Virus record (IMG/VR): IMGVR_UViG_3300033182_000980
Span: 310,001-374,000 of that record
Direction: 5' to 3' (one strand)
Length of the DNA stretch: 64,000 bases
Position numbers and translations under genes: made by a program. The notes under the pieces are model-generated. The model saw only the letters and a program-made list of their open reading frames with translations. It was not told the origin of the DNA and did no database searches. Shown here in pieces: positions 23,032 to 52,522 of the stretch (positions are counted from its first letter, which is position 1; each line of letters opens with the position of its first letter).

Positions 23032-23049
23032 ATAGATAAGGGGGCTACG
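23032..23049 (-). promoter_or_regulatory. Class-1 element, degenerate
   Basis: cgtagcccccttatctat on minus strand. Confidence 0.5.
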
Positions 23050-23057
23050 CTTCTGGA

Positions 23058-23657
23058 TCATTCGATCCTAAAGTCACCAGCGATCCAAGCGAGGTCTAAC
23101 TGGTGGACGAGATCATATCTGTTCATTTTACGGGCGATAGATTTGAGTTTGTAACAGCGATCCTCAAGGGCATAATGTTGTCTCTGTTTGACCGATAGGA
23201 TCTCTTTGATCTCATAGTGATCTTTGGCCTTTATTTCGAGGTGTGCTTTTCGACCACTCATGTCATAGATGTATTGTTCGTCCCATCTGATAGAGGATCT
23301 ATCGTAGGTTGTCTCGGAGGGTATGACGACCTCGACCTTGCCTTGAGGCTTGGTGAGTTGGAAAACAAAGGTTGAGCAGTAAGAGCCACAGTCGGCTGTA
23401 TTCTCTTCTCCCCAATCATCATCTGGATAGAACTTAGATTTTGTTTCGATGAGGTTGAAGCCTTCGCCTTTGATTTCGATCTTGAGGTCTTTCTTGATGT
23501 GCCATACTCGGAACTGCATTGCACTACAGGTAGCCCAAGCGTCAAAGTAGGCACACGCACCATTTCGATCATTGGGATCATCGAAGAAAGAGTTCTCTTC
23601 CCAGTCACCCCATTCACAGCTACCTTCACCAAAGAGTCTAAAGTCTCCTCTCATCAT
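23058..23657 (-). CDS. Hypothetical protein, paralog of 23654
   Basis: Shares the T.P.G.V, W....I.D..G..A.L and HY...EIL pattern. Confidence 0.7.
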   Translation of the reverse strand: MMRGDFRLFGEGSCEWGDWEENSFFDDPNDRNGACAYFDAWATCSAMQFRVWHIKKDLKIEIKGEGFNLIETKSKFYPDDDWGEENTADCGSYCSTFVFQLTKPQGKVEVVIPSETTYDRSSIRWDEQYIYDMSGRKAHLEIKAKDHYEIKEILSVKQRQHYALEDRCYKLKSIARKMNRYDLVHQLDLAWIAGDFRIE

Positions 23658-24217
23658 GGTGCAAGCTCCATGATCTTATTGTTGAGCATAGTGCGAACAT
23701 CACCTTTAGACATATTACGAAGTCGTGCGAGTCGTTTGATTTCGATGAGAGTTTCTTCTTCTTGAGGGGTGAGGATCTCCTCTACCTTGTAGTGTCCTTG
23801 TTCGGTCTTGAGGAGTCGGGCTTCATTACCTCGTAGGTCTTTGATTAAGCCATCTTTCCATACGACCTCGACCTTATTGTCATCTATCTTGATAGAGACA
23901 TGACCGTTGGGTTGAGTGATCACCCAGTCGATCTCGATCTCATGTTGCTCACAGGGGATCTCCTCATCGTTATCATCCCAAGTGGTGCTTTCGGTACATT
24001 TTTGCTCATGGGAGATGATACGCACACCTTCAGTCTCAAGTTTGTATTCCTTTTTGATTTCGCTGTAAGCACAGAGACTCAACAGCACTCCCTCATGGAC
24101 ATTGAAGAAGGTTTCAGCACCCCCCTCCCATGCGTCTATATTTGAGTCAAGATCAAAGTGTTCTTCGGAGTTATCTGTGTTCCATTTTAGGAAGTATGGA
24201 TTGATGATGTTAAACAT
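23654..24217 (-). CDS. Hypothetical protein, paralog of 23058
   Basis: 187 aa; AAGGAG RBS. Confidence 0.7.
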   Translation of the reverse strand: MFNIINPYFLKWNTDNSEEHFDLDSNIDAWEGGAETFFNVHEGVLLSLCAYSEIKKEYKLETEGVRIISHEQKCTESTTWDDNDEEIPCEQHEIEIDWVITQPNGHVSIKIDDNKVEVVWKDGLIKDLRGNEARLLKTEQGHYKVEEILTPQEEETLIEIKRLARLRNMSKGDVRTMLNNKIMELAP

Positions 24218-24299
24218 GGTTCTCCTTTAGCGAGTGAGAGGGTTGATACTTACTTAACGATCTCAACACTTGAAATAAGACAAATCTTTTAAACTTTTT

Positions 24300-24476
24300 T
24301 CACCAACCTCGATTGGCTTTACTTTTCGCTCGGTTAGCTTGTTGCTCCTTCTCTTGGAGGAGTCTCCAGAGGGCTTGAGCTTCTTGCTCGGTTAGCTTAT
24401 CGAGCATGGGGAGGAGCGTTTGTCTGTCGCAACGCTCTCTATGAAAGAGAGCCGAGAGGTGTCGTTTGATGCTCAT
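24300..24476 (-). CDS. 58 aa protein absent from the ORF track (MSIKRHLSALF...ANRGW)
   Basis: ATGA overlap with the stop of 24473..24694; translated by hand. Confidence 0.5.
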   Translation of the reverse strand: MSIKRHLSALFHRERCDRQTLLPMLDKLTEQEAQALWRLLQEKEQQANRAKSKANRGW

Positions 24477-24694
24477 GCGATACCTCCCATCATGGCTACT
24501 GTTTGAGTGAACACGCTCTCGCTCTCTTTCTTGAGTAGAGAGAGGGCTTCATTGATTGCGAGGTCAGTACACCCTCTCATGTTCTGTTCTGTGATGTATG
24601 GGCCTTTAACAGCCTCATTGAGATGCCACAGCATAGCCTTGAGTGGTGTGCCTGTGAGCTTGTCGAGTTTTAGATTTAAGGTTGTTCGTTTCAT
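24473..24694 (-). CDS. Hypothetical protein
   Basis: 73 aa; RBS; follows element at 24718. Confidence 0.65.
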   Translation of the reverse strand: MKRTTLNLKLDKLTGTPLKAMLWHLNEAVKGPYITEQNMRGCTDLAINEALSLLKKESESVFTQTVAMMGGIA

Positions 24695-24717
24695 GTGTTC
24701 TCCTTTTACGAAGTGAT

Positions 24718-24734
24718 ATAGGTAAGGGGTTACA
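24718..24734 (-). promoter_or_regulatory. Class-1 element
   Basis: tgtaaccccttacctat. Confidence 0.7.
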
Positions 24735-24822
24735 GGTTCTTCATACGATAGTAGCTGACGATGAAGAGTCCGATGAGGCAGATGCTGGCGACACCAGCGA
24801 TGTCTAGGATTGTTGAGATCAT
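24730..24822 (-). CDS. 30 aa single-TM peptide MISTILDIAGVASICLIGLFIVSYYRMKNL
   Basis: AAAGGAG RBS; its TAA stop lies inside the class-1 element. Confidence 0.55.
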   Translation of the reverse strand: MISTILDIAGVASICLIGLFIVSYYRMKNL

Positions 24823-24910
24823 TGTCTTTAGTCTCCTTTAGGCTGAACCCTTTCGGTTGTTCTGGTGTAGAATGATGATAATCATTAGTGCGAGAAGTTT
24901 AAGAGTCATG

Positions 24911-25120
24911 TTAGACCTTCCATACTTGCGTGAATCCAAATCGAAGCTCTAGTGCCTCTAGGAACGCACTTTGGCTCTTGGGTGAACCCTCCACATCAAC
25001 TTTCACATAAGGCTCGTAGGGAGTGCCTTCTCGTGTCTTTAAAGACACACCATGTGTCATGGCAATAGAGTGGAGCTGACACTCCTTAGAGTGTATGGTT
25101 CTGGTCATGGCGAGGGTCAT
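24911..25120 (-). CDS. Hypothetical protein
   Basis: 69 aa ORF in a co-oriented run. Confidence 0.5.
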   Translation of the reverse strand: MTLAMTRTIHSKECQLHSIAMTHGVSLKTREGTPYEPYVKVDVEGSPKSQSAFLEALELRFGFTQVWKV

Positions 25121-25134
25121 AAGGTTGCTCTCTC

Positions 25135-25671
25135 TTAGCGAGGGTTGTTGAACGCATCCCGATCCACCGTTTCGTCAAACTCGGTGATCTCGTGTCGGAT
25201 GTAGCGTGGGAGGTTCAAGTTAGTTTCGATGCAGTTGCGGATTGCTGTGAAGAGGTGCTTTGCCTCTTTGAGTGGATAGTGTCCATCAACGATGACACCC
25301 CGAACATATTGACGGCCATCCTCCGAGTAGAAGAAGGGAGTACCATCTCTACGAGTGAGCTTACCACTGTAGCTCTTAGGTCGGTTAGTGTTGTTTCCTG
25401 CGAGGCTCGCTTGGGTGCTAGGGATCATCCCCTTGCTACCGAACAGCACCTTATCGACATCAGCTTCGGTGCATTGAACACCTGCCTCATTGATGAGGGC
25501 AGTAGCCTGTGCGAGAGTGTTAGAGCTTGTGAAGGCTTGAAGGCGAGTCAGACGCTCCTGGAGGACTGCCTTGTAGGGGACGGTCATGTCGAGGATGACG
25601 CTGTAGAGTCCATCTCCATTGATGCGGCCGAGTTTGACTCTTGGATGATTGGTTGGGGTTGAGTTATTCAT
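25135..25671 (-). CDS. Hypothetical protein, possible distant relative of 26680/29388
   Basis: YVRGVIV and IETNLNLPRYIRH resemble HVRGIII and ISSELDL...WRQY; start moved to the ATG after AGGAG. Confidence 0.6.
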   Translation of the reverse strand: MNNSTPTNHPRVKLGRINGDGLYSVILDMTVPYKAVLQERLTRLQAFTSSNTLAQATALINEAGVQCTEADVDKVLFGSKGMIPSTQASLAGNNTNRPKSYSGKLTRRDGTPFFYSEDGRQYVRGVIVDGHYPLKEAKHLFTAIRNCIETNLNLPRYIRHEITEFDETVDRDAFNNPR

Positions 25672-25722
25672 CTTTAGTCTCCTATGAGAGTGAGTGGGCT
25701 TCATTGCCCTCGATACTAGGTT

Positions 25723-25739
25723 ATAGATAAGGGGTTACG
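25723..25739 (-). promoter_or_regulatory. Class-1 element
   Basis: cgtaaccccttatctat; contains the stop of the upstream gene. Confidence 0.75.
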
Positions 25740-26034
25740 CTTCTAGCTCATCAGCGAGCTGATCGTTCACGCTGTCGAAGAAAAAGTCGAGGCGAGTCCG
25801 ATCACTTTCGCTGACGGAGGCGGTCGTATTGATCACATCATAGAAGCATGGGGCATCGGGAGCTACCTCCTCCATGACGGAAACCATGTTGATGTACATC
25901 CCACGCTCTGCGATGTTGATCTCCTCCTCATTCTCCTCGGCCTCATCCATGAGGTCTTGGAGCTGATTGCGATAGCTCTGCATTTGAGTTTCGATCTGAC
26001 GAGAGAGCTGTAGTAGTTTCTCTTGGACTGTCAT
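25735..26034 (-). CDS. Acidic hypothetical protein
   Basis: 99 aa; RBS. Confidence 0.65.
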   Translation of the reverse strand: MTVQEKLLQLSRQIETQMQSYRNQLQDLMDEAEENEEEINIAERGMYINMVSVMEEVAPDAPCFYDVINTTASVSESDRTRLDFFFDSVNDQLADELEA

Positions 26035-26078
26035 GTCTGTTCTCCTTTACGAAGTTGGGTGTCGATTACATAGGTTAT

Positions 26079-26095
26079 ATGATTAAGGGGTTACA
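26079..26095 (-). promoter_or_regulatory. Class-1 element
   Basis: tgtaaccccttaatcat. Confidence 0.7.
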
Positions 26096-26148
26096 AGCTC
26101 TAAAGCCGACAGTTAGTTGGCAGTCGCTACCACCCTCGATACTAGACT

Positions 26149-26165
26149 ATAGATAAGGGGTTACA
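26149..26165 (-). promoter_or_regulatory. Class-1 element (no ORF before the next copy)
   Basis: Exact consensus. Confidence 0.75.
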
Positions 26166-26227
26166 CTTCCCCACGGTAGAAATGCACGAGTCAGAGAATA
26201 CGCAAAGTTTTCGAGGGTTTAGGTGTC

Positions 26228-26244
26228 TGTAACCCCTTATCTAT
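26228..26244 (+). promoter_or_regulatory. Class-1 element
   Basis: Exact consensus; divergent from 26149. Confidence 0.75.
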
Positions 26245-26302
26245 ATCATAGTATCGGGGCTGAATGACTCACCCCACCAACCACTCCCCAATGGAGAACA
26301 TC

Positions 26303-26563
26303 ATGAACGCACTTCCCCCCCTAACATACGCAGAAGCCTCACATGGTATCACCAAGATCGTCAGTGATCTTGGCTTCCCCCTCTTTATGGGTGAGGCAGA
26401 GCGTAAGCCTACTGTCAAGGCTGTACGCAAGCAAGTGAGTGCTTACTACAACCGACTCCACCGAGAGAACAAGCTCGACTGTCTCCATGCGTATGACGCA
26501 GAGAATAAGTCAGAGCTTCTTGAGGCGGCCGTGGCAGAGCTTCTTGAGCGAGTCGAGGGCTAA
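26303..26563 (+). CDS. Hypothetical protein
   Basis: Start moved to MNAL after a GGAG RBS. Confidence 0.6.
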   Translation: MNALPPLTYAEASHGITKIVSDLGFPLFMGEAERKPTVKAVRKQVSAYYNRLHRENKLDCLHAYDAENKSELLEAAVAELLERVEG

Positions 26564-26574
26564 GAGAGTCGGGT

Positions 26575-26591
26575 TGTAACCCCTTATCTAT
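26575..26591 (+). promoter_or_regulatory. Class-1 element
   Basis: Exact consensus. Confidence 0.75.
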
Positions 26592-26679
26592 AACCTAGTG
26601 TGAGAGGCTAGGGAAACAATCACCCAGCAATCATATAACTTAATCTGCAACCACACCATCTCTTGAAAGGAGAACCACC

Positions 26680-27303: not shown

Positions 27304-27320
27304 TGTAACCCCTTATTCAT
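27304..27320 (+). promoter_or_regulatory. Class-1 element
   Basis: tgtaaccccttattcat. Confidence 0.7.
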
Positions 27321-33344: not shown

Positions 33345-33361
33345 ATAGATAAGGGGTTACG
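33345..33361 (-). promoter_or_regulatory. Class-1 element
   Basis: Consensus; contains the stop of 33357..33773. Confidence 0.75.
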
Positions 33362-35295: not shown

Positions 35296-35312
35296 ATAGA
35301 TAAGGGGTTACA
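35296..35312 (-). promoter_or_regulatory. Class-1 element
   Basis: Exact consensus. Confidence 0.75.
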
Positions 35313-35335: not shown

Positions 35336-36496
35336 TTAGAGGTCGATAGGGCAAACATCAGAGCTGGCTTGGCTTTGAGCGTCTACCACATCGGAGCGTA
35401 GGTAGGGGTCGATAGCACCCTCAAGAGCGTCTTGATTGTGCTTCTCGTTGAGATGCCCCTTGATGATCGCAAAGGATCGCTTGAGAGCCTTCTTAAAGTC
35501 GGTGATGCCTAAGTCCTCCATGACTGTAAGGCAAGCATGACCCCATTGCTTTGCTTGGCGTAGAGTGATCTCCATACCCATCGCTTGCTCCTCTGCTACC
35601 TTACGGATAGCTCGGTTGCAGTCCACCAAGAGCTTCACTTGGTCTTGATCAAACTGAGGAAACTCAGCCTGTACGACCATACGCTCAAACTTAGGTGTAG
35701 GAGGTGGAGCGTAGATACCGACACAGCGAGACAGGAGGCTTGAGTCTTTCATTTGGGTGATGTTCCCTCGACCACCATCCCCATCTGCACCACTATTGCT
35801 CGTAAAGTAGAAGCGAGTGTTAGGCAAGATCTCAAACATCTCACCTGTGATTGGGTTGGTCAGCTTCTCTTTGCCTAGCTCAAGAGCTTGGCGGAGGATC
35901 TCAAGCTGGTCGGGTGTAGCTCTGTCGTAGTCAGAGAAGAGGATGACTGCGGGTACTGTGATTGTAAGCATACCCTTGTCATTGACAACAGTATAGCCGA
36001 CTTTCTCCATGCCCTTGATTGCGTCTTGAAGCTGTTGCTCGGTTGCCCCTGTAAAGTCTCGCTTGCACGACACCCCACGACAAGCCTTGAGCAGATCACC
36101 CTCGACCTCTTTAGTCATTGTGCCACCTTTGCCATCACCTACGAGCGTGGTTCGGTAGATCCAGTCCACAGGATTTGTGCCTTGCTTAAAGGCAAAGCGA
36201 GCGAGAGGCAGATTGAAAGCGTGGCAAAACGCCTCGATTAAGATGTCCTTACCTGTACCAGCAGGCCCCGACACGATGAGGTGGTTGATTTTCAAGAAGA
36301 GAGTGCCATCTTGCATCCACCCCTCGCTCGTGTCCTCGACATAGTTGTCGGGACGCTTTGCAGGGTCGAAGCCAGCGTTGATGATCTCTAACGCTGTGAG
36401 TGGCGACATTGTTCTACGCACACCACAGAAGTAGTTGTAGGCGAGGGTATACAGTTCGGGTCGCTGACGATTTTTTTTCATGTTCATATCGACCAT
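35336..36496 (-). CDS. MoxR/CobS/CbbQ-type AAA+ ATPase
   Basis: Walker A GPAGTGKD, Walker B region ILFSDYDR, sensor TSNS, SLLSR, ITLRQ; next to a vWA gene. Confidence 0.8.
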   Translation of the reverse strand: MVDMNMKKNRQRPELYTLAYNYFCGVRRTMSPLTALEIINAGFDPAKRPDNYVEDTSEGWMQDGTLFLKINHLIVSGPAGTGKDILIEAFCHAFNLPLARFAFKQGTNPVDWIYRTTLVGDGKGGTMTKEVEGDLLKACRGVSCKRDFTGATEQQLQDAIKGMEKVGYTVVNDKGMLTITVPAVILFSDYDRATPDQLEILRQALELGKEKLTNPITGEMFEILPNTRFYFTSNSGADGDGGRGNITQMKDSSLLSRCVGIYAPPPTPKFERMVVQAEFPQFDQDQVKLLVDCNRAIRKVAEEQAMGMEITLRQAKQWGHACLTVMEDLGITDFKKALKRSFAIIKGHLNEKHNQDALEGAIDPYLRSDVVDAQSQASSDVCPIDL

Positions 36497-36539: not shown

Positions 36540-36556
36540 ATAAATAAGGGGTTACA
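36540..36556 (-). promoter_or_regulatory. Class-1 element
   Basis: tgtaaccccttatttat. Confidence 0.7.
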
Positions 36557-36620: not shown

Positions 36621-36637
36621 ATAAATAAGGGGTTACA
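36621..36637 (-). promoter_or_regulatory. Class-1 element (no ORF before the next copy)
   Basis: tgtaaccccttatttat. Confidence 0.7.
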
Positions 36638-36701: not shown

Positions 36702-36718
36702 TGTAACCCCTTATCTAT
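36702..36718 (+). promoter_or_regulatory. Class-1 element
   Basis: Exact consensus. Confidence 0.75.
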
Positions 36719-36757: not shown

Positions 36758-36952
36758 ATCAAATACCAAGTCATACTGAACAACACCCAAGTCCTCTCAA
36801 CACATAAAAATCGCAAGCTCGCTGAGAATGCACTCAGACGATGGATGAAGAAGCATGATGAGGAGCGTCAAGCCCACAACCGAATGATCAGTTGGGTTGA
36901 CCCAAAGCTCGTTCGCAATGTGAGTGGGGTCTACCACATCCGAGCAGTGTAA
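36758..36952 (+). CDS. 64 aa ORF with ATC at the start position (non-canonical start or pseudogene)
   Basis: AGGAGAACGCTT-ATC versus AGGAGAACGCTT-ATG at 42819 and 47121; TAA lies in the next element. Confidence 0.5.
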   Translation: MKYQVILNNTQVLSTHKNRKLAENALRRWMKKHDEERQAHNRMISWVDPKLVRNVSGVYHIRAV

Positions 36953-36964
36953 CCCCTTATCTGT
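36948..36964 (+). promoter_or_regulatory. Class-1 element
   Basis: tgtaaccccttatctgt. Confidence 0.7.
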
Positions 36965-38187: not shown

Positions 38188-38201
38188 CAGATCGGGGCTG
38201 T

Positions 38202-38218
38202 TGTAACCCCTTACTTAT
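38202..38218 (+). promoter_or_regulatory. Class-1 element
   Basis: tgtaaccccttacttat. Confidence 0.7.
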
Positions 38219-38244: not shown

Positions 38245-39057
38245 ATGCCTAATAAGTACGACACACAAGTCTTGTCCTCGATCAATCGGGGAACAAATAA
38301 AGTGAGGCGAGCCTTAGAGGTCGCCAATCAAAAGGTCGGTCAAAACTTTATCGGTGCTCGCTTGAACACTCGAAGCTCGGCTCTCGTGAATACGCTTACT
38401 AGCGTTCGCACTGGTCAGATCAATCGTGATCGCTACCATAAGATGTACCAGAAGCCACAAGTGAGAGCGGCGTTCTCGTTCGCTATAGACGGTAGCGACT
38501 CGATGAACTACAACACAGGGTGTCCGAGTGGCACTTACTGGAAAGAGTGTATCAGTCTCATACATGGGCTTCATACAGCTTGCCAAGGGATCGGGGTTGA
38601 CTCAACCTCTGCGTTGGTCATGTACACCTATGGTGATCGTGATGTGCCTATGGCAAGCTCTAGCTATAAGCCTGTGGCTAACATGATCAAAGGTCTTGGT
38701 GATAAATGGCAACGAGATAATCCCGATAAGCTACGCAAGAAGCGTTGCAATGGAGGAACATCAATCATCTGTTATGCCGAGACCGCACTAGACATGGTAT
38801 CTCAATCTGACGCTACCCATAAGATCGCCTTCTTCCTTACCGATGGTGAGGACTATGAAAAGGCTTACCTAGAGAGCATGAGACAGCAAGCTCAAGCTCA
38901 AGGCATCAAGCTAGTAGGGATCGGGCTAGGTGTGAGTGGTGATCGACTCCCTAATGGCATTAGTGGTGCTAATGCTCTTGAGATCGCACCTCGAATGATG
39001 GATCACCTAGAGAAAATCATCAAGTCCTCAACAGGTGTAGAGGCAAACGACAAATAA
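38245..39057 (+). CDS. von Willebrand factor A domain protein (CobT C-terminal-like)
   Basis: MIDAS DGSDS, GGT, FFLTDGE, LVGIGLG. Confidence 0.85.
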   Translation: MPNKYDTQVLSSINRGTNKVRRALEVANQKVGQNFIGARLNTRSSALVNTLTSVRTGQINRDRYHKMYQKPQVRAAFSFAIDGSDSMNYNTGCPSGTYWKECISLIHGLHTACQGIGVDSTSALVMYTYGDRDVPMASSSYKPVANMIKGLGDKWQRDNPDKLRKKRCNGGTSIICYAETALDMVSQSDATHKIAFFLTDGEDYEKAYLESMRQQAQAQGIKLVGIGLGVSGDRLPNGISGANALEIAPRMMDHLEKIIKSSTGVEANDK

Positions 39058-39830: not shown

Positions 39831-39847
39831 TGTAACCCCTTATTTAT
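39831..39847 (+). promoter_or_regulatory. Class-1 element
   Basis: tgtaaccccttatttat. Confidence 0.7.
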
Positions 39848-39981: not shown

Positions 39982-39997
39982 AGTAAAGTCGGGGTTC

Positions 39998-40014
39998 TGT
40001 AACCCCTTATCTAT
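39998..40014 (+). promoter_or_regulatory. Class-1 element
   Basis: Exact consensus. Confidence 0.75.
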
Positions 40015-40069: not shown

Positions 40070-40372
40070 ATGATCGACTTAACCAACTACCCAATGCTCA
40101 ACGCTCGTCAGCACACCCCCTTCTTCGCAGACCTCACCTCAGAGGATCGTGTGATGAATGTCAACGGTAGCCCCATGTCTCATGGGGTGTGGAACATGAT
40201 CGTCAGCCACCGAGATCTCAAGCTGTGGTGTCGGCTCGGAATGAAACCCCATCGTGGGTGGAAGGTGAGCCAGGCGAAGGCTTACTTCGGCATCAAGGGC
40301 AACAAGGACAAGCTCTTGAAAGAGTTTGAGGCTCTTAAGGCAGAGGTAGACGAGATCCTTTTAGGGCGATAA
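40070..40372 (+). CDS. Hypothetical protein
   Basis: 100 aa; RBS; between two elements. Confidence 0.7.
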   Translation: MIDLTNYPMLNARQHTPFFADLTSEDRVMNVNGSPMSHGVWNMIVSHRDLKLWCRLGMKPHRGWKVSQAKAYFGIKGNKDKLLKEFEALKAEVDEILLGR

Positions 40373-40382
40373 TGATCGGGGT

Positions 40383-40399
40383 TGTAACCCCTTATCTAT
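40383..40399 (+). promoter_or_regulatory. Class-1 element
   Basis: Exact consensus. Confidence 0.75.
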
Positions 40400-40451: not shown

Positions 40452-40976
40452 ATGAACAGCGTAAACATCACAGCCGAAAACTTTATCCCAGCTCTCCTCG
40501 CACCCTTCGGTGGCAAGGACACCCACAACGAGGCAGGCGAGGCTCTCCCCTCAACCAGCTCTAAGGCTTGGAGCTTCACCCTCCACAATCGTGATCGCAA
40601 CACTCACCTCACCTTCAAGGCTCGCCGCCCGAAGGGGTGGACTGTAGAGTCTCCTGTCCTCATCGACCTCATGACAGGCAAGGACAACGATGCAGACTTT
40701 GGCTTCATCGGGAGCGTCAGTCCTCGTGGGTTCTACAAGCCAAGCCCCAAGAGCAAGGTAGACGCTGATCGCCTTGAGGTAGCCAATCGCACAATGGTTT
40801 GGCTTCTCACCAAGCTCAACAATGGGGTGGAGCTTCCCGATGCCCTAGAGATCAAGGGTGCTTCTAAGTGCTGTAGGTGTGCTAAGAAGCTCACCAACCC
40901 CGACAGCGTAGACGATGGGATGGGTCCAGTCTGTCGCCGTAAGGCTAACGAGAGCAAGGTTAGCCGAGGGGTCTAA
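40452..40976 (+). CDS. DUF6011-like Zn-finger protein, paralog of 50168
   Basis: CCRCAKKLTNPDSVDDGMGPVC. Confidence 0.75.
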   Translation: MNSVNITAENFIPALLAPFGGKDTHNEAGEALPSTSSKAWSFTLHNRDRNTHLTFKARRPKGWTVESPVLIDLMTGKDNDADFGFIGSVSPRGFYKPSPKSKVDADRLEVANRTMVWLLTKLNNGVELPDALEIKGASKCCRCAKKLTNPDSVDDGMGPVCRRKANESKVSRGV

Positions 40977-41472: not shown

Positions 41473-41489
41473 TGTAACCCCTTATCTAT
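41473..41489 (+). promoter_or_regulatory. Class-1 element
   Basis: Exact consensus. Confidence 0.75.
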
Positions 41490-42708: not shown

Positions 42709-42761
42709 ATAGGAACACGCTTCCTATTTAGAAAAGGTAGAAGCACTTCCACCTTTCAACT

Positions 42762-42778
42762 TGTAACCCCTTACCTAT
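42762..42778 (+). promoter_or_regulatory. Class-1 element
   Basis: tgtaaccccttacctat. Confidence 0.7.
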
Positions 42779-45960: not shown

Positions 45961-45977
45961 ATAGATAAGGGGTTACA
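45961..45977 (-). promoter_or_regulatory. Class-1 element
   Basis: Exact consensus. Confidence 0.75.
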
Positions 45978-46495: not shown

Positions 46496-46512
46496 ATAGA
46501 TAAGGGGTTACA
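46496..46512 (-). promoter_or_regulatory. Class-1 element
   Basis: Exact consensus. Confidence 0.75.
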
Positions 46513-46566: not shown

Positions 46567-46779
46567 CTACTTGCCTTTCTTGTCTTGCATCCACTGGGTG
46601 AAGTCGATGACCTCTTGCTTTGGGGCGTACAGCTCTTGGAGGAGCTTCGCCTTGATCGTGTCGATGTCAGACTCGCTGACCTCCCACACTCGATCCCCAT
46701 GAGAGGTTGGCTGGCCAGTCTTGATCGAGTGGGCCATCTCCTTCACGAAGTTGTTGATGTCTTCATTGGTCATACGCAT
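46567..46779 (-). CDS. Hypothetical protein
   Basis: 70 aa; RBS. Confidence 0.65.
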   Translation of the reverse strand: MRMTNEDINNFVKEMAHSIKTGQPTSHGDRVWEVSESDIDTIKAKLLQELYAPKQEVIDFTQWMQDKKGK

Positions 46780-46840
46780 AAGCGTTTATCCTTTGTCAAA
46801 GAGTGGTTGCGTGGGTGGTCGCTACCACCCACGCTAGTTC

Positions 46841-46857
46841 ATAGATAAGGGGTTACA
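46841..46857 (-). promoter_or_regulatory. Class-1 element with a perfect 11-bp hairpin downstream
   Basis: Exact consensus; gcgtgggtggt-agcg-accacccacgc. Confidence 0.75.
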
Positions 46858-47121
46858 TTAGTCTCGAACGATGCGTCCTAGTCGGTTCACCTTGATAACG
46901 AAGGTATCACCATGACGGTAAGCGTCATCACCTTTTCCGATGATGGCAGACTGTACAAGAAGGACATAGCGATGACCTTTTACAAGGTGGTCAAACATAT
47001 CTTTCCAAGGCAGTCTTGGTTGTGAGGATGAGGCTGATGTCAGACGAACACGCTTCACATCATAGGACACTTGAGCTTTAGCCCAAGCAAACACATCAGC
47101 TTTACTCGGCATAGAAGCCAT
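46858..47121 (-). CDS. Hypothetical protein
   Basis: 87 aa; RBS; stop abuts the element. Confidence 0.65.
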   Translation of the reverse strand: MASMPSKADVFAWAKAQVSYDVKRVRLTSASSSQPRLPWKDMFDHLVKGHRYVLLVQSAIIGKGDDAYRHGDTFVIKVNRLGRIVRD

Positions 47122-47188: not shown

Positions 47189-47205
47189 ATAGATAAGGGG
47201 TTACA
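47189..47205 (-). promoter_or_regulatory. Class-1 element (back-to-back pair)
   Basis: Exact consensus. Confidence 0.75.
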
Positions 47206-47211: not shown

Positions 47212-47228
47212 CGTAACCCCTTATCTAT
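47212..47228 (+). promoter_or_regulatory. Class-1 element (back-to-back pair)
   Basis: cgtaaccccttatctat. Confidence 0.75.
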
Positions 47229-47295: not shown

Positions 47296-47577
47296 ATGCT
47301 TATGCGTATGCCTACTAAGTCCGACTACCTAGCCTACGCTGGCTACTCACGCTCTTACCAGGTTGAGGTCTGTGCTTGCGAGTACGACTCAAAGGGTATG
47401 ATCCTCGACTTCGCCACAGACGGATGGGAAGGGCGGCAGCTTCGCAATGTGCCAACTGACACACCCCTTCAGCTCAACATCATGGATCGCAATGGCGACA
47501 AGATGGAGGACATCGGGATCAGCATCAATGGTGAGACTGGTGAGATCGAGTGCAGTAGCAAGCACTTCGAGGGCTAG
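47296..47577 (+). CDS. Hypothetical protein
   Basis: 93 aa; AGGAGG RBS. Confidence 0.65.
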   Translation: MLMRMPTKSDYLAYAGYSRSYQVEVCACEYDSKGMILDFATDGWEGRQLRNVPTDTPLQLNIMDRNGDKMEDIGISINGETGEIECSSKHFEG

Positions 47578-47593
47578 GGTAGTCGGGGTATCG

Positions 47594-47610
47594 AGTAACC
47601 CCTTAATCAT
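47594..47610 (+). promoter_or_regulatory. Class-1 element
   Basis: agtaaccccttaatcat. Confidence 0.65.
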
Positions 47611-47800: not shown

Positions 47801-47812
47801 GAAGGACTGCAC

Positions 47813-48424
47813 ATGACACTTACCCAAAAAGTAAATGGGGTTCGGAAGATGATCCCGACCCCTCATCACAAGACAGCGTATAAGACCAATGCGTCCGAGC
47901 AGTCTTGGCTTGCCCGACATCGTGATCTGTTCATCCAGCTTGCCGAGGAGGTGGGCTTCGAGGTGGGGGTGGGGAGTCGAGAGCTTCGGCTGACGCACGA
48001 CATCGGAAACTTCACCGTCCGATTCCATTGGGATCGGGAGTGGTCAACAATCGAGATGTACGGTCGCTGTGTTGATCGAACCACCCGAACCTACCACCAC
48101 TGGCGAGGTGATGCTAAACCCAAATCGCACAATGACGCACACCTTGGAAACTGGTTTCTCAAGAATGTGCGAGAGGACTGGATCGGGTCCAATATGCCAC
48201 CGATGGAACAGATCGGTCCGAGGGACGAGATCGTGTTTACCTCCACTCCGACAGGTGGGGGTCAAAGAACACGAGCAAAGGTCATCGAGCGAGGGGGCAA
48301 GTGGGGCAACAACTACTTCAAGGTCGAACTGCTAGAGGAGCGAGGGGTGAAGAAGATCAAGCCCATCGGTACGGTGGTGGAGGTACACTATAACTGCATC
48401 ATCCACCACGAGAGCAAAGCGTAA
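47813..48424 (+). CDS. Hypothetical protein
   Basis: 203 aa; TAA inside the next element. Confidence 0.65.
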   Translation: MTLTQKVNGVRKMIPTPHHKTAYKTNASEQSWLARHRDLFIQLAEEVGFEVGVGSRELRLTHDIGNFTVRFHWDREWSTIEMYGRCVDRTTRTYHHWRGDAKPKSHNDAHLGNWFLKNVREDWIGSNMPPMEQIGPRDEIVFTSTPTGGGQRTRAKVIERGGKWGNNYFKVELLEERGVKKIKPIGTVVEVHYNCIIHHESKA

Positions 48425-48436
48425 CCCCTTATCTAT
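48420..48436 (+). promoter_or_regulatory. Class-1 element
   Basis: cgtaaccccttatctat. Confidence 0.75.
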
Positions 48437-48849: not shown

Positions 48850-48850
48850 T

Positions 48851-49228
48851 ATGAGTTGGCATCAACATATATCAGAGTTAGCAGACATGATCAATGAAGC
48901 CCACAGCCTACGGTTGACCGACAAACAAGAGGCTCTTAGTTGGGCTGAGGATTACATCGACCAATCCGAAACCTATGAGGAGATCAAAGACCTAGCCCAC
49001 CACTACGGGATAGGATCTGTCGAGGTCGCCCAACCCCAAAAGATAAAAGACCAGCTCAAAAAAATGATCGCTGATGAGGTGCTTGATTGGAAAGGGGCAG
49101 AGGCTGAAGAAGCTGAGGAGGAGGAGGCCGAGTGGGAAGTCGAGTCTACTTGCGATGACCAATGGGAGATCGAGTATGAGGACGAGGACGAGGCAGAGGA
49201 CTGCGAAGCATGGGAGGGCGAGCGATGA
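48851..49228 (+). CDS. Protein with a highly acidic C-terminus
   Basis: E/D/W-rich tail; start placed at MSWH. Confidence 0.6.
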   Translation: MSWHQHISELADMINEAHSLRLTDKQEALSWAEDYIDQSETYEEIKDLAHHYGIGSVEVAQPQKIKDQLKKMIADEVLDWKGAEAEEAEEEEAEWEVESTCDDQWEIEYEDEDEAEDCEAWEGER

Positions 49229-49824
49229 AAGCACTCATAGGGCTAACGCTCAAGAAGGCTAAGGAGGTCGCCAAGCAAGAGCTAGGGGTCAAGAGGATGG
49301 GCGATGCTCGCTTTCAGATGATCCTCGATCAAGGAGTCAAGAGAGGCGACTTCATCCTCGAAGGCGACATGATCAAAGACCCCAACATCAGCTCGACAGA
49401 CCCCCTCGACCTAGACCTGTTCGGTGAGATCGAAGAGGTCGAGGAGGAGGTCGAAGCATCACCCGACCCTGTGATCTCCACTAAGACCATCCACCCCGAA
49501 GTAGCCCACCTCGACCCCAAGCTGTCCAGCTCTGACCTACCACGAGCTGGTGATCTCTACCACTACAGATCCTACTCTGGTGAGGTCGTGCAAGGTGAGG
49601 TCAAGTCCACCATCTGCTTTGCCGAGTGTCAGAACCCCGATGGCACATGGCAGACAGTCGCCTTTCAAGACCTCTACCTCAAGAAGCGTGGAGTGCCTAA
49701 AGAGACGATGCTAAATCACCTCAACGCTTACTACCAGAATAATAATAATTTAAGAGCAGAGCATGATCAGCTCTTAAAAGAGATAAGCGAGCTTAAGGGG
49801 AAAGTGGACGAGGCGAAGGGGTAG
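49225..49824 (+). CDS. Hypothetical protein with a DLFGE acidic linker
   Basis: ATGA overlap; LDLDLFGEIEE. Confidence 0.65.
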   Translation: MKALIGLTLKKAKEVAKQELGVKRMGDARFQMILDQGVKRGDFILEGDMIKDPNISSTDPLDLDLFGEIEEVEEEVEASPDPVISTKTIHPEVAHLDPKLSSSDLPRAGDLYHYRSYSGEVVQGEVKSTICFAECQNPDGTWQTVAFQDLYLKKRGVPKETMLNHLNAYYQNNNNLRAEHDQLLKEISELKGKVDEAKG

Positions 49825-49825
49825 C

Positions 49826-49842
49826 TGTAACCCCTTATCTAT
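49826..49842 (+). promoter_or_regulatory. Class-1 element
   Basis: Exact consensus. Confidence 0.75.
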
Positions 49843-49895
49843 GTCCTAGTGTCGGGGCTTATGACCAGCCCCCCACTCACACTAGGAGAACCCCC

Positions 49896-50138
49896 ATGAA
49901 AGTCACAATCTATCCAGCCACTCAAGCCCCCCACACTGTAGTGGTCAGCACCTTCTCTGACCTACAGAAGCTCGTAGGTGGAGACATCCAGGTTGTTAAG
50001 GAGACGAGCCTTGGCGACCTACTCGTCAACGAAGAGGGCTTGCTCATGAACCTACCTCGCAATCAGCACTACCCCTTCCTCGTGGGTGATGTTGTCCTCG
50101 CACCCAAGGGCTGGGGCGACCTTCCCTACGGCGACTAA
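49896..50138 (+). CDS. DUF3846-like protein
   Basis: LQKLVGGDIQ, VNEEGLLMNLPRN, LVGDVVL. Confidence 0.7.
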   Translation: MKVTIYPATQAPHTVVVSTFSDLQKLVGGDIQVVKETSLGDLLVNEEGLLMNLPRNQHYPFLVGDVVLAPKGWGDLPYGD

Positions 50139-50167
50139 CCCACCAACACTCTGACAAGGAGAACCCC

Positions 50168-50701
50168 ATGCACCAGATCGTTGTTTCACCAGCCGACTTC
50201 CTCAACCACCTCAACGCTCCATTCTTCGGGGCGACCCATGACCAAGACGGCAACGCCCTCCCCTCCAAGCGTACCAAGGAGTGGGTGTTCACGCTCGGCA
50301 ACGAGCGTAAGGATAATCACCTCACCTTCAAGGCGACTCGCCACAAGGGGCAGACCGTCAATGATCCTGTCGAGGTCAGCCTCAATCTGCATGGGCTGAA
50401 CAGCATCCATGACCCTGTGTATCAGACCATCGGGACGGTGGACTCTAGGGGTACGCTCCGAGTCCAGTACGGACTCAACCTTAACCAGCCGAGACTCGAC
50501 ATCGGCTATGACACCCTCGTCTGGCTCTTAGGTGTGGCGACCGACCCTAGCTATGAGATGCCCGACCATCTCCAGATCATGTGTGAAGCACGATGTGCAA
50601 GATGCCGACTCCCCCTCACCAACCCTAACAGCCTCAAGTCAGCCATCGGCCCCATATGTCGTAGCAAGATCAACAAGAGCAAGCCAGCCAAGAGGCCATG
50701 A
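50168..50701 (+). CDS. DUF6011-like Zn-finger protein, paralog of 40452
   Basis: CARCRLPLTNPNSLKSAIGPIC; HLTFKA shared. Confidence 0.75.
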   Translation: MHQIVVSPADFLNHLNAPFFGATHDQDGNALPSKRTKEWVFTLGNERKDNHLTFKATRHKGQTVNDPVEVSLNLHGLNSIHDPVYQTIGTVDSRGTLRVQYGLNLNQPRLDIGYDTLVWLLGVATDPSYEMPDHLQIMCEARCARCRLPLTNPNSLKSAIGPICRSKINKSKPAKRP

Positions 50702-50805
50702 AAATTTACTCGCTCACCCCACTAAAATTTTTAGGGCGAGCCGAACAAAAATCTCAGCGTGTAGAAATCAGAGGGTCGGGGGGTGCTTCGCAGAAGCAGT
50801 CCGAG

Positions 50806-50822
50806 TGTAACCCCTTATCTAT
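50806..50822 (+). promoter_or_regulatory. Class-1 element
   Basis: Exact consensus. Confidence 0.75.
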
Positions 50823-50884
50823 AGTCTAGTGTGGGGAGGCTGACAGGCTGACCCAACCCCCCCTCTCGAACAAGGAGAACCGAC

Positions 50885-51346
50885 ATGACGATCACCAAGA
50901 CACACGCTGACATCAAGACCCTTGAGGCGAGCCTCGATCAGCTCAACGCACAGCTCAAGGCCGAGCACCCCAACCACTGCACCAAGTGTGGGGGTGTCGG
51001 GGGTGACATCTCCACCAGTGGCGATGGGTGGCACGAGCCGATCACAGATGACTGGAACGACTGCTCGGCTTGTCTCGGTCAGAGCCTCAACCCCCTCGAC
51101 CTCACCTCGACCATCTCCGATGAGGACGCAGAGGCCCATGTCGAGCGGATGACGGATGGGGAGCACCCCCTCCTCTCCAAGATCCATGAGGTCGAGCTTG
51201 AGCTTCACTACGAGCAGATGCACCTCGCACACCTTGAGATGGAAGAGGCCGAGCGAGAGTGGCTTGAGCGTGAACACGAGCGAGCGATGAGAGAGGCCGC
51301 CGAGGACGAGCAGAGCTACCTAGAGTTTTACTCCGACCTCAACTGA
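50885..51346 (+). CDS. CxxCxGxG...CxxC zinc-finger family protein
   Basis: HPNHCTKCGGVGG...CSACLGQSLNPLD. Confidence 0.7.
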   Translation: MTITKTHADIKTLEASLDQLNAQLKAEHPNHCTKCGGVGGDISTSGDGWHEPITDDWNDCSACLGQSLNPLDLTSTISDEDAEAHVERMTDGEHPLLSKIHEVELELHYEQMHLAHLEMEEAEREWLEREHERAMREAAEDEQSYLEFYSDLN

Positions 51347-51347
51347 G

Positions 51348-51364
51348 CGTAACCCCTTATCTAT
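51348..51364 (+). promoter_or_regulatory. Class-1 element
   Basis: cgtaaccccttatctat. Confidence 0.75.
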
Positions 51365-51430
51365 GACCTCGTGTAAGGGGCGACTACTTCGTACTCGCCC
51401 ACCCACCCACTCCCCCTAATGGAGAACCCC

Positions 51431-51829
51431 ATGACAGACCATCACACACAAGCCAAGCTCGCAGACCTCAAGAGGCGAGCTGACCTCAACGCGGCTAAGC
51501 GAGCCGAGATCACAGCCAAGCTCAACGCTGACTACCCCCACCTATGCGACCAGTGTGATGGGACAGGTGGTGAGATCTCCTACGACTGGGGGAGCTTCAC
51601 AGAGCCGCCGTGCCATGACTTCGAGGCTTGCTCGGTCTGTCTTGGAGAGGGCTTGAACCCTCTCGACATCACCTCCACCTTGAGTGAGGATGAGGTCGAG
51701 GCATGGATCGACAAGGTGCTTGATGACCTCAAGTACCCCCTCCCCCTCCACGCAGACCTTGAGGCTCTGATGCAAGAGGCAGATGCTCTCGGAGAGGAAC
51801 AGGCAGACCTCCTAATGAGGCAAGGCTAA
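51431..51829 (+). CDS. CxxCxGxG...CxxC zinc-finger family protein
   Basis: YPHLCDQCDGTGG...CSVCLGEGLNPLD. Confidence 0.7.
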   Translation: MTDHHTQAKLADLKRRADLNAAKRAEITAKLNADYPHLCDQCDGTGGEISYDWGSFTEPPCHDFEACSVCLGEGLNPLDITSTLSEDEVEAWIDKVLDDLKYPLPLHADLEALMQEADALGEEQADLLMRQG

Positions 51830-51977
51830 TGCTCCCCCCTCAAAGACAGGGTTAATCAACATTCTGTCAGAACCCCACCAAAAACTATTGCGGGGATCTC
51901 GGAGTCCCTAAAACCGCATATTGAAAACGCATACAAAATGACACCCTTAATTTGAAACCATGTTTCAACCACCCTTT

Positions 51978-51994
51978 CGTAACCCCCTAGTTAT
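51978..51994 (+). promoter_or_regulatory. Class-1 element, degenerate
   Basis: cgtaaccccctagttat. Confidence 0.5.
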
Positions 51995-52026
51995 AGGGCT
52001 ACACAACCGAACCAAAGGTATGAACA

Positions 52027-52398
52027 ATGGACACTACAGCAACTAAAACACAATACGAGCTAGACGCAGAGCTAGTGGCACATAAGTTATCAGAGCTTCG
52101 AGGAGGCTCTTACCACGATGCACGACCTGTTGAGATCAAGATCGAGAATGGGGGGTGCTACATCAGCTTCAAGATGTGGTCGGGTGAGGACGAGCCGGAG
52201 GAAGATGAGGACGATGACCGAGAGTGGAACTTGGAGTGTTCGACAGGTGATCTTCTGTCAGATCTCAAGAGGGCGTGTCGTGAGAGTGGTGTAGACATCG
52301 ACATGGTGTACCAATACTGCGATGTCCATAATGATCGCTACAGAGGCATCTATGTCGATGCCTGTATCGACCTCACCCACACAGGAGCAGACGAATAG
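52027..52398 (+). CDS. Acidic hypothetical protein
   Basis: 123 aa ORF. Confidence 0.6.
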   Translation: MDTTATKTQYELDAELVAHKLSELRGGSYHDARPVEIKIENGGCYISFKMWSGEDEPEEDEDDDREWNLECSTGDLLSDLKRACRESGVDIDMVYQYCDVHNDRYRGIYVDACIDLTHTGADE

Positions 52399-52505
52399 GG
52401 TTAAGTCTCCAGAGGGGGGGTCTTATATATGAGCATTTTTGGAAAAGCGATGTTGGATAAGTGATCTCATATATTATTTGGCGGGGGATTTTTTGGGTTC
52501 GATTT

Positions 52506-52522
52506 TGTAACCCCTTATCTAT
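52506..52522 (+). promoter_or_regulatory. Class-1 element
   Basis: Exact consensus. Confidence 0.75.

What the first reader, a model, noticed from the sequence alone, without database searches (positions are those of the whole stretch)
23032..52522. Array of single-gene expression cassettes headed by TGTAACCCCTTATCTAT
Seen: 34 copies by eye, 32 between 23.0 and 52.5 kb plus 3823 and 6848. All lie at gene boundaries and point toward the downstream gene. The typical unit is element, NNNCTAGTRT, GC hairpin, C/A-rich leader, AAGGAGA, ATG, then one or a few short ORFs, mostly unknown and often paralogous. None was seen inside the structural or replication operons. Known analogy: PeSL (promoter-early-stem-loop) cassettes that shuffle modules in T4-type phages. 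Inference: this is a phage-specific early promoter (TATRNY as a -10-like box, GTAACCCC upstream, no TTGACA) that also provides homology for gene gain, loss and shuffling. A repressor site or a site-specific recombination site is the alternative.
Basis: partly seen in the sequence, partly recalled or inferred. Interest (0 to 1): 0.85.

Follow-up and report, generated by a model that had tools for sequence, protein, structure and literature searches.

The report
Phage-specific promoter heading shuffled gene cassettes
A 17-base sequence repeated 34 times in this piece of a 375-kb uncultured marine giant phage is most likely the phage's own promoter, placed in front of one to five small genes each time, and relatives differ by cassettes gained, lost, swapped or flipped exactly at this sequence.

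Summary
YGTAACCCCTTATYTAT occurs 31 times at up to 3 mismatches (0.13 expected); the 11-base core occurs 33 times, plus one degenerate copy at 23032. Of these 33 copies, 31 point at a Shine-Dalgarno site, a start codon and an ORF 18-124 nt downstream. The window is bases 310,001-374,000 of a 375,691-bp IMG/VR contig. The same element, with the same layout, occurs in about 30 related marine contigs. It also occurs in a Tara Oceans scaffold that I fetched through a protein, not through the motif.

It behaves as a compact, self-contained promoter. It is a sharp 17-nt block followed by a purine. Divergent copies sit back to back, only 6 bases apart. The shortest units leave 11-13 nt before the ribosome site. 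Sigma-70-type sites are not enriched. Across orthologous regions the block is more conserved (0.91) than second codon positions (0.88).

Relatives show a cassette swap, a cassette inversion explained by recombination between inverted copies, and cassette indels, all bounded by the element. Breakpoints also occur at junctions without the motif.

I could not identify the polymerase or factor that reads it. "Early" timing is untested.

Verdict: a non-sigma-70 analogue of T4-type PeSL cassettes, a new variant of a known kind.

The parts
23032..52522 (.). Cassette array: six blocks of alternating direction, (-)24.7-26.2 kb, (+)26.2-27.3, (-)33.3-36.6, (+)36.7-42.8, (-)46.0-47.2, (+)47.2-52.5. Each unit is element, leader, SD, then 1-5 small ORFs. 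G+C is 0.48-0.57, against 0.42-0.46 in the flanking modules.
3823..3839 (-). element copy (3 mismatches), heads the 141-aa ORF 3365-3790
6848..6864 (-). element copy (exact), box + hairpin, heads the 155-aa ORF 6323-6790
23032..23049 (-). degenerate copy (CGTAGCCCCCTTATCTAT) about 175 nt upstream of the operon that holds the 3049-aa ORF. The Tara relative has a variant copy at the same place.
24718..24734 (-). element copy, minimal unit (SD about 20 nt downstream)
25723..25739 (-). element copy, box + hairpin; overlaps the stop codon of the upstream ORF
26079..26095 (-). element copy, hybrid form with TCATATAAC in place of TCTAT
26149..26165 (-). element copy + box + hairpin with no ORF, 70 nt upstream of the next copy ('solo' unit)
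26228..26244 (+). element copy, divergent partner of 26149-26165
26575..26591 (+). element copy
27304..27320 (+). element copy, hybrid TTCATATAAC form, heads a 5-gene unit
33345..33361 (-). element copy, box + 8-bp GC hairpin
35296..35312 (-). element copy, heads a 3-gene unit
36540..36556 (-). element copy, heads the AAA_5 (MoxR/CobS-like) 386-aa ORF
36621..36637 (-). element copy, solo unit 81 nt upstream of 36540-36556
36702..36718 (+). element copy, divergent partner; no ORF of at least 30 aa within 140 nt
36948..36964 (+). element copy, box + hairpin, then TCATATAAT, heads a 381-aa ORF
38202..38218 (+). element copy, minimal unit (SD starts 13 nt after the block); heads a VWA-domain ORF
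39831..39847 (+). element copy, box + hairpin
39998..40014 (+). element copy. Its cassette (40070-40372) is swapped in order with the next one in the 226-kb relative.
40383..40399 (+). element copy; its roughly 55-nt leader is almost identical to that of 39998 although the genes differ
41473..41489 (+). element copy
42762..42778 (+). element copy; homology to the relative starts at 42761
45961..45977 (-). element copy, heads a 3-gene unit
46496..46512 (-). element copy, no hairpin
46841..46857 (-). element copy, 11-bp hairpin; this cassette is absent from the 226-kb relative
47189..47205 (-). element copy, back to back with 47212-47228 (6 bases between them)
47212..47228 (+). element copy. Its cassette (47296-47577) is inverted in the 226-kb relative.
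47594..47610 (+). element copy, hybrid ATCATATAAC form; homology to the relative starts at 47595
48420..48436 (+). element copy; overlaps the end of the upstream ORF
49826..49842 (+). element copy, box + hairpin
50806..50822 (+). element copy, box + hairpin
51348..51364 (+). element copy, hairpin
51978..51994 (+). variant copy (GTAACCCCCTAGTTAT)
52506..52522 (+). last copy; heads the long + strand operon 52553-56416. The relative has an extra cassette inserted here.

Best explanation
The 17-bp block YGTAACCCCTTATYTAT is a complete, compact promoter specific to a family of marine giant (about 330-375 kb) myovirus-like phages.

Inferred mechanism:
- The block is bound by a phage-directed transcription machine. 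This is either a phage-encoded RNA polymerase or a phage specificity factor on the host core enzyme. It has not been identified.
- Transcription starts at, or within a few bases after, the purine that follows TAT.
- The transcript carries a 5' leader. In about a third to a half of units the leader starts with YTAGTRT and a G+C-rich stem-loop, probably a 5' stabiliser or regulator site. A G-poor C/A-rich stretch follows, then a strong AAGGAGA ribosome site, then 1-5 small genes.

Shown by comparison of genomes:
- The same 17 bp, often with 30-55 bp of similar leader, sit in front of dozens of units in both orientations.
- The copies mark cassette deletion and insertion between direct copies and inversion between inverted copies, as expected if they serve as homology for recombination.
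- The cassette, with the element as its 5' border, is the unit of gene-order change.
For: 1. Reality and orientation: the element is far above chance, and 31 of 33 copies point at an SD-start-ORF 18-124 nt away.
2. Shape: in 141 non-redundant copies the information content rises sharply at -17/-16 and falls after -1. Position +1 is A in 62% and G in 15%. Upstream positions carry no information, so there is no -35.
3. Compactness: divergent copies lie 6-9 bp apart, at window 47189-47205/47212-47228, L150 3787/3797 and L191 3737/3746. Neither partner has room for further upstream elements. No other promoter can feed them, which also excludes a purely RNA-level element.
4. Start-site limit: minimal units have the SD 11-13 nt after the block (window 38203, L055 1824, L150 4482). 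The start must therefore lie within about 10 nt of TAT.
5. No host-type promoters: sigma-70-like sites number 11, against 14.9 expected, in 34-53.5 kb, a stretch that holds more than 25 transcription units.
6. Purifying selection: identity across aligned relatives is 0.906 for the block (0.97-1.00 at -16 to -6). It is 0.65-0.73 for the flanks, 0.88 for codon position 2 and 0.64 for codon position 3.
7. Check free of ascertainment bias: a Tara Oceans scaffold fetched through the giant protein has 8 exact copies in the 10 kb on the array side. There are none in 20 kb of the RecA-terminase side.
8. Recombination: 13 of 57 homology end-points lie within 10 nt of a copy (3.7% expected, maximum 12% in 500 trials). 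Homology starts exactly at the block at 26229, 40383, 42761, 47595 and 52507. Cassettes 40070-40372 and 40452-40976 are swapped in the 226-kb relative. Cassette 47296-47577 is inverted there, exactly as predicted by exchange between the inverted copies at 47204(-) and 47595(+). Cassettes 46567-47121 are absent there. There are also extra cassettes and 'solo' element-leader units (26149, 36621).
Against:
- No single-subunit or multisubunit RNA polymerase and no sigma factor was found. I searched the window and about 1.5 Mb of fetched loci, an estimated 40-50% of the family's gene content. Methods were motif regexes, phmmer/hmmsearch with T7, N4 RNAPII and N4 vRNAP, hhalign, Pfam and PHROGs on about 85 large ORFs (the 38 array ORFs, 23-46 kb, were scanned with Pfam as well), and AlphaFold + Foldseek on two parts of the 3049-aa protein.
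- Per junction, breakpoints are only about twice as frequent at motif-bearing junctions (27 at 24 junctions) as at junctions without the motif (18 at 31). Selection for intact genes explains part of the pattern.
- Most relatives were fetched through the motif, which inflates its apparent conservation. L191 is the control for this.
- The hairpin is present in a minority of copies.
Confidence: 0.68

Rival explanations
1. The block is the binding site of a phage regulator, either an operator or a 'stoperator' like the asymmetric 13-bp sites of cluster A mycobacteriophages. On this view it sits on or beside weak promoters and is not itself the polymerase recognition sequence.
For: It is asymmetric, intergenic, present in many copies, and always oriented with transcription, as stoperators are (from my own knowledge of phage L5). 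At least one ORF in the array (23-46 kb) gives weak winged-helix/HTH Pfam hits.
Against: No separate promoter elements exist. There is no information upstream of the block, sigma-70-like sites are not enriched, and back-to-back pairs leave 6 bp between blocks. No integrase or repressor, and no sign of a temperate lifestyle, was seen in the loci examined. Conservation is as strict as for single-subunit polymerase promoters.
Confidence: 0.12
2. The block is a promoter for a host alternative sigma factor, not a phage-specific one. For example, CCCCTTAT resembles the CCCCATNT -10 element of heat-shock sigma-32 promoters.
For: The resemblance of CCCCTTAT to the sigma-32 -10 consensus comes from my own knowledge. 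A start about 7 nt downstream would still satisfy the limit set by the minimal units.
Against: There is no -35-like conservation 13-17 bp upstream. Conservation continues through TCTAT, which would be the discriminator. In 185,579 species genomes the 18-mer gave only chance hits. The one multi-copy case (MAG AUK107) is a roughly 150-bp dispersed repeat without any cassette layout.
Confidence: 0.1
3. The block is a site-specific recombination site, either integron attC-like or a target of the family's poxvirus-type topoisomerase IB (whose known relatives cut at CCCTT), and gene expression comes from elsewhere.
For: Cassette borders coincide with the block. The invariant core contains CCCTT. A protein matching Pfam Topoisom_I (E = 2e-13) and, weakly, Phage_integrase is conserved in the family (L004:294-1751).
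Against: CCCTT occurs 169 times outside the element, more than the 130 expected, so it gives no specificity. The block is not an inverted repeat. No integron-type integrase, resolvase or invertase was seen. Divergent units need promoters, and nothing else is conserved there. The fixed orientation and the short, SD-linked distance to start codons are promoter features.
Confidence: 0.04
4. The block acts at the RNA level, as a processing site or 5'-UTR signal in long polycistronic transcripts.
For: It has a constant position before SD sites and is followed by a stem-loop in part of the copies.
Against: Back-to-back divergent copies have only antisense coding sequence upstream, so no transcript could carry them. 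The block itself has no conserved structure. There was no Rfam match in the window.
Confidence: 0.04

Closest known systems
PeSL (promoter-early stem-loop) cassettes of T4-type phages (Arbiol et al. 2010, PMC2839356; Comeau et al. 2014, PMC4122927)
   Same: A repeated promoter plus G/C stem-loop plus SD sits in front of small ORFans in hyperplastic regions. Indels and replacements between relatives are bounded by the repeats. Leaders are exchanged between neighbours. The stems are G-run/C-run.
   Different: The PeSL promoter is a sigma-70 -35/-10 early promoter with an AT-rich upstream region, read by host RNA polymerase. Here there is no -35/-10, only a contiguous 17-nt phage-specific block. 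The PeSL stem-loop overlaps or precedes the promoter and acts as a terminator. Here it lies downstream in the leader and has no U tract. PeSL mini-circles were shown by PCR; nothing comparable could be tested here. The host phage is a very different, roughly 375-kb marine phage.
Promoters of single-subunit phage RNA polymerases (T7, T3, SP6 type)
   Same: One contiguous, almost invariant block of about 17 bp ends at the start site. The last bases are T/A-rich (CTAT here, CTATA in T7) and are followed by a purine. AACCC(C)T lies around -13 to -8, as in the T3 promoter (from my own knowledge). There are many copies per genome, and some transcripts carry a 5' stem-loop.
   Different: No T7-like polymerase gene was found in the DNA available. 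Position +1 is mostly A, not G. Copies head small accessory genes rather than the replication and structural genes.
Promoters of giant-phage multisubunit polymerases (phiKZ, AR9; AR9 late consensus AACA-N6-TA/G, PMC5449584)
   Same: A giant phage with its own promoter consensus unrelated to sigma-70, and compact promoters next to the start site.
   Different: Those consensus elements are short and A/T(U)-rich. No beta/beta'-like genes (DFDGD and similar motifs) were found here.
Stoperators of cluster A mycobacteriophages (L5)
   Same: Asymmetric, multi-copy, intergenic sites oriented with transcription.
   Different: Those bind the immunity repressor of a temperate phage and sit inside operons fed by separate promoters. 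Here nothing else could serve as the promoter.
Morons and integron gene cassettes
   Same: Autonomous small gene units that can be added to or removed from a genome.
   Different: Morons lack a shared flanking repeat. Integron cassettes are promoterless, are bounded by attC inverted repeats, and are moved by an integrase.

Membership tests
PeSL cassettes (T4-type phages) | Sigma-70-like early promoter (-35, -10, AT-rich upstream region) | tested here: not met
   The logo of 141 copies shows no information upstream of -17 and no bipartite pattern. Sigma-70-like sites number 11 against 14.9 expected.
PeSL cassettes (T4-type phages) | Adjacent stable stem-loop, often G-run/C-run, acting as terminator or attenuator | tested here: inconclusive
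   A downstream G+C hairpin occurs in a minority of copies (stems of at least 7 bp: 14% against 5%). An upstream G-run pairs with the block's CCCC in 41 of 141 copies. There is no U tract, and terminator activity was not testable.
PeSL cassettes (T4-type phages) | Located between small non-essential ORFs in variable regions, followed by SD and start codon | tested here: met
PeSL cassettes (T4-type phages) | Insertions, deletions and replacements between relatives bounded by the elements | tested here: met
   a swap, an inversion and indels; 13 of 57 end-points lie within 10 nt of a copy, against 3.7% expected
PeSL cassettes (T4-type phages) | Excised mini-circles formed by exchange between neighbouring elements | not testable with these tools
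T7-type single-subunit polymerase promoter | Contiguous, near-invariant block of about 17-23 bp abutting the start site | tested here: met
T7-type single-subunit polymerase promoter | Cognate T7-like RNA polymerase gene in the same genome | tested here: inconclusive
   None was found in the window or in the fetched family loci. Only part of the 375-kb genome could be read.
T7-type single-subunit polymerase promoter | Transcripts start at the base after the block | not testable with these tools
   No RNA data. Indirect limit: the start lies within about 10 nt of TAT.
phiKZ/AR9-type giant-phage promoters | Split beta/beta'-like multisubunit polymerase genes | tested here: inconclusive
   No DFDGD, GEME or similar motifs and no Pfam RNA polymerase hits in the loci held
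Mycobacteriophage stoperators | Sites lie within operons served by separate promoters and bind an immunity repressor | tested here: not met
   No separate promoters exist, and back-to-back pairs lie 6 bp apart. No repressor was identified.
Integron attC sites | Imperfect inverted repeats at the 3' end of promoterless cassettes, plus an integron integrase | tested here: not met
   The block is not palindromic, it lies at the 5' end of units in both orientations, and no integrase was found.

The most novel reading that the evidence does not exclude
The element is read by a transcription enzyme or specificity factor with no detectable similarity to known single-subunit or multisubunit RNA polymerases or sigma factors. 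That protein would be encoded by a globally distributed family of marine giant phages (Saanich Inlet, Tara Oceans). The same 17-bp promoter would double as the portable homology that lets these phages exchange accessory-gene cassettes.
Probability: 0.2. Interest if true: 0.85.

Novelty: new variant of a known kind. Interest (0 to 1): 0.55.

Why it matters
The element gives a ready-made regulon map for an uncultured, almost unannotated family of giant marine phages: at least 58 promoter-headed units in one genome. It singles out the genes most likely to act in host takeover.

It extends the PeSL idea (regulatory repeats as vehicles of modular shuffling) beyond T4-type phages and beyond host-type promoters.

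It also poses a concrete open question, namely which protein reads a 17-bp promoter in a phage where no polymerase or sigma factor can be recognised. A short, highly specific promoter with an unknown cognate enzyme is of practical interest as an orthogonal expression part.

Tried and rejected
Polymerase hunt (all negative):
- Pfam and PHROGs on the 767-, 800-, 3049-, 1001-, 1008-, 1127-, 1799-aa and about 80 other ORFs.
- PDB sequence searches.
- ESM Atlas. The 767-aa protein is a gp5/VgrG-like baseplate hub; the others gave no lead.
- Regexes for catalytic motifs.
- phmmer/hmmsearch with T7, marine T7-like, N4 RNAPII and N4 virion polymerase.
- hhalign of 101 clusters of large ORFs against a T7-like profile.
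- AlphaFold of residues 1280-1930 and 2560-3049 of the 3049-aa protein (pLDDT 67 and 69) with Foldseek against PDB. No hit at E below 0.001. The folds are beta-rich, with capsid-like and small-barrel matches only.
- A DIDGD motif in a 525-aa protein turned out to be an EF-hand.
- A profile scan of IMG/VR for T7-like polymerases returned only about-40-kb podoviruses.
- Walking from RecA in relatives found an intein-bearing terminase, not a polymerase.

Host search: the scan of species genomes gave chance hits, plus a bacterial dispersed repeat in MAG AUK107 that happens to contain the 18-mer.

Topoisomerase IB/CCCTT idea: rejected as unspecific.

ECF-sigma reading (TGTAAC-N17-GTRT): rejected because the 'spacer' is invariant and the box is missing from most copies.

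Other negatives:
- The literature holds no mention of the core sequence.
- No close or annotated phage relative: megablast found nothing, and tblastn hit one unannotated 485-kb uncultured phage.
- No tRNA or Rfam family in the window.
- The exact-protein look-up of the truncated RecA failed.

Full report
**What is there.** The string TGTAACCCCTTATCTAT matches 31 times at up to 3 mismatches, where 0.13 matches are expected. The 11-base core GTAACCCCTTA matches 33 times, where 0.76 are expected. A 34th, degenerate copy lies at 23032-23049(-). The copies form six blocks of alternating direction between 24.7 and 52.5 kb, plus two copies at 3.8 and 6.9 kb. Of the 33 copies, 31 are followed on the same strand, 18-124 nt away (median 54), by a Shine-Dalgarno site, a start codon and an ORF of at least 30 aa. 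The antisense direction gives 10 and random sites give 12. Units hold one to five genes, and about half hold one gene. Almost none of the proteins has a recognisable family. Five paralogous pairs exist.

**Where the window comes from.** The window is identical to bases 310,001-374,000 of IMG/VR contig 3300033182_000980, which is 375,691 bp long. It has no close relative among deposited phages. The left part encodes tail and baseplate proteins, including a gp5/VgrG-like hub, and a 3049-aa protein conserved in 40 unannotated relatives. The right part encodes a clamp, an exonuclease and RecA. Family loci also carry a T4-type terminase, a portal, a sheath, DNA polymerase A, a D5-like primase, RNR and PhoH. 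It is therefore a giant myovirus-like phage from marine samples. Relatives come from Saanich Inlet metagenomes (the record name of L344) and from Tara Oceans scaffolds of 301-333 kb.

**The element is a family trait.** Exact-pattern scans of IMG/VR found it, with the same layout (element, leader, AAGGAGA, ATG), in about 30 contigs from about 20 metagenomes. In the 375-kb contig about 25 further copies lie outside the window, again mostly before small ORFs. These loci were fetched through the motif, so I used a locus fetched through a protein as a control. Tara scaffold L191 has 8 exact copies in the 10 kb on the array side, including a back-to-back pair, and 2 in the tail region, one exact and one with a substitution. 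It also has a variant copy before the giant-ORF operon. Twenty kb around RecA and the terminase have none, except at the edge of the array.

**Anatomy.**
- In 141 non-redundant copies the information content jumps from about 0.1-0.5 bit to 2 bits at the G of GTAACC. It stays high through TTA-T-Y-TAT and collapses after the next base, which is A in 62% and G in 15%.
- A weaker YTAGTRT box at +5 to +10 is present in 41 of 141 copies. It goes with a G+C-rich hairpin (mean folding energy -7.3 against -2.1 kcal/mol).
- Perfect stems of at least 7 bp occur in 14% of leaders, against 4.5-5% in controls, and start mostly at +12 to +14.
- The rest of the leader is C/A-rich and G-poor.
- In 41 of 141 copies a G-run just after the upstream stop codon can pair with the block's CCCC.

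**Why I read it as a promoter.**
1. Divergent copies lie 6-9 bp apart (window 47189-47205/47212-47228; also L150, C226, C205 and L191). Upstream of each copy is only the other copy and antisense coding sequence. Transcription must therefore start at the element itself, and the element needs nothing further upstream.
2. Minimal units place the ribosome site 11-13 nt after the block, so the start lies within about 10 nt of TAT.
3. Sigma-70-type sites are not enriched in 34-53.5 kb (11 against 14.9 expected), although that stretch holds more than 25 units.
4. In alignments with relatives the block is 0.906 identical (0.97-1.00 at -16 to -6). Its flanks are 0.65-0.73 identical, second codon positions 0.88 and third codon positions 0.64.

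A contiguous 17-nt block ending in CTAT plus a purine is the layout of single-subunit phage polymerase promoters. That comparison, and the resemblance of AACCCCT to the T3 promoter, rest on my own knowledge and are leads, not tests.

**Who reads it.** This is unresolved. I found no T7-like, N4-like or multisubunit polymerase and no sigma factor in the window or in about 1.5 Mb of fetched loci. The methods are listed under Tried and rejected. Two conserved parts of the 3049-aa protein fold into beta-rich domains with no polymerase match. Only an estimated 40-50% of the family's gene content was readable, so absence is not shown. 'Early' timing is an inference from the kind of genes involved and was not tested.

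**Recombination.** Homology between the window and relatives often begins exactly at the block: at 26229, 40383, 42761, 47595 and 52507. Of 57 independent homology end-points in 22.9-53 kb, 13 lie within 10 nt of a copy. Random placement gives 3.7%, with a maximum of 12% in 500 trials. Per junction, 27 end-points fall at 24 motif-bearing junctions and 18 at 31 motif-free junctions. The gene-order maps show three things.
- A swap of the adjacent cassettes 40070-40372 and 40452-40976 in the 226-kb relative.
- An inversion of cassette 47296-47577. The relative's order is P<, X(-), P<, P>, Y. That is exactly the product of an exchange between the inverted copies at 47204(-) and 47595(+) in the window's order P<, P>, X(+), P>, Y.
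- Absence of cassettes 46567-47121, extra cassettes at 52.5 kb, larger inverted blocks in the 205-kb relative, and ORF-less 'solo' element-leader units (26149, 36621, L084).

Neighbouring cassettes with unrelated genes share nearly identical 55-nt leaders (39998 and 40383). This behaviour matches that described for PeSLs (PMC2839356). Selection for intact genes explains part of the boundary effect.

**Rivals.** An operator or stoperator reading fails because no separate promoter exists. A host alternative-sigma reading is weakened by the missing -35, by conservation that continues through the discriminator, and by the lack of any bacterial genome with cassette-like copies. A site-specific recombination reading, including the CCCTT/topoisomerase IB idea, is unspecific and leaves expression unexplained. 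An RNA-level element is excluded by the back-to-back pairs.

**Verdict.** It works like PeSLs but is not a member of that family, because the sigma-70 promoter is absent. It is a new variant of a known kind, and the reading enzyme is the open and most interesting question.

Noticed in passing
window 7293-7301(-), 26074(-), 26631(+), 27317(+), 36682(-), 36997(+), 39058(+), 43592(+), 43616(-), 47607(+), 57094(-), 61065(-): A second enriched motif, WCATATAAY (12 copies against 1.5 expected), lies in intergenic DNA pointing at genes. Some of these genes are on the structural and replication sides, which lack the main element. It may be a second promoter class. In three copies of the main element it replaces TCTAT (a hybrid form, GTAACCCCTTAATCATATAAC).
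   Followed up: partly
window 13163-22312(-): A 3049-aa ORF next to baseplate genes has 40 homologues of 2,000-3,900 aa in giant marine phage contigs. It has no Pfam, PDB or Foldseek match. The two parts I modelled are beta-rich. G+C skew reaches -0.44 over its 5' part.
   Followed up: partly
window 24000-52000 versus the rest: The cassette array has a higher G+C content (0.48-0.57) than the structural and replication modules (0.42-0.46).
   Followed up: no
window 26149-26165(-), 36621-36637(-); L084 2711(+): 'Solo' units: element plus box plus hairpin with no ORF, directly followed by another element. They look like footprints of cassette loss or of exchanges inside leaders.
   Followed up: partly
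window 39991-40006, 40378-40391, 38190-38210, 47580-47600 and others: A G-rich stretch (TCGGGGYT) right after the upstream stop codon can pair with AACCCC of the element (41 of 141 copies). This may be an attenuator for read-through, reminiscent of the G-run/C-run stems of PeSLs.
   Followed up: partly
L285-L343 (MAG 'bacterium AUK107', JAGGVT01): A real bacterial genome (FtsK, NADH dehydrogenase subunit G, HEAT and LVIVD repeat proteins) carries 25 or more copies of a roughly 150-bp dispersed repeat. By chance this repeat contains the same 18-mer. It has no cassette layout and gives no evidence about the host.
   Followed up: yes
L345:10687-13812(+); L162:9156-10547(+): Relatives carry inteins (Intein_splicing, LAGLIDADG/Hint) inside the large terminase subunit, just beyond the window's right end, and inside an IMP dehydrogenase gene.
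   Followed up: no
L004:294-1751(-), also L005, L006, L034: A conserved 485-aa protein matches the eukaryotic/poxvirus-type topoisomerase IB catalytic core (Pfam E = 2e-13), which is unusual for a phage. The element's core contains CCCTT, but that pentamer is common throughout the window.
   Followed up: partly
window 26680-27285/29394-29984; 40452-40976/50168-50701; 50885-51346/51431-51829; 29019-29345/30411-30752; 23058-23657/23654-24217: Five paralogous gene pairs (22-46% identity) lie within the window, four within the array and one at its left edge (23058-24217). This shows cassette duplication as well as exchange.
   Followed up: partly
window 35336-36496(-), 38245-39057(+): An AAA_5 (MoxR/CobS-like) ATPase and a VWA-domain protein, each headed by the element. 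This pair is common as an auxiliary gene set in marine phages.
   Followed up: no
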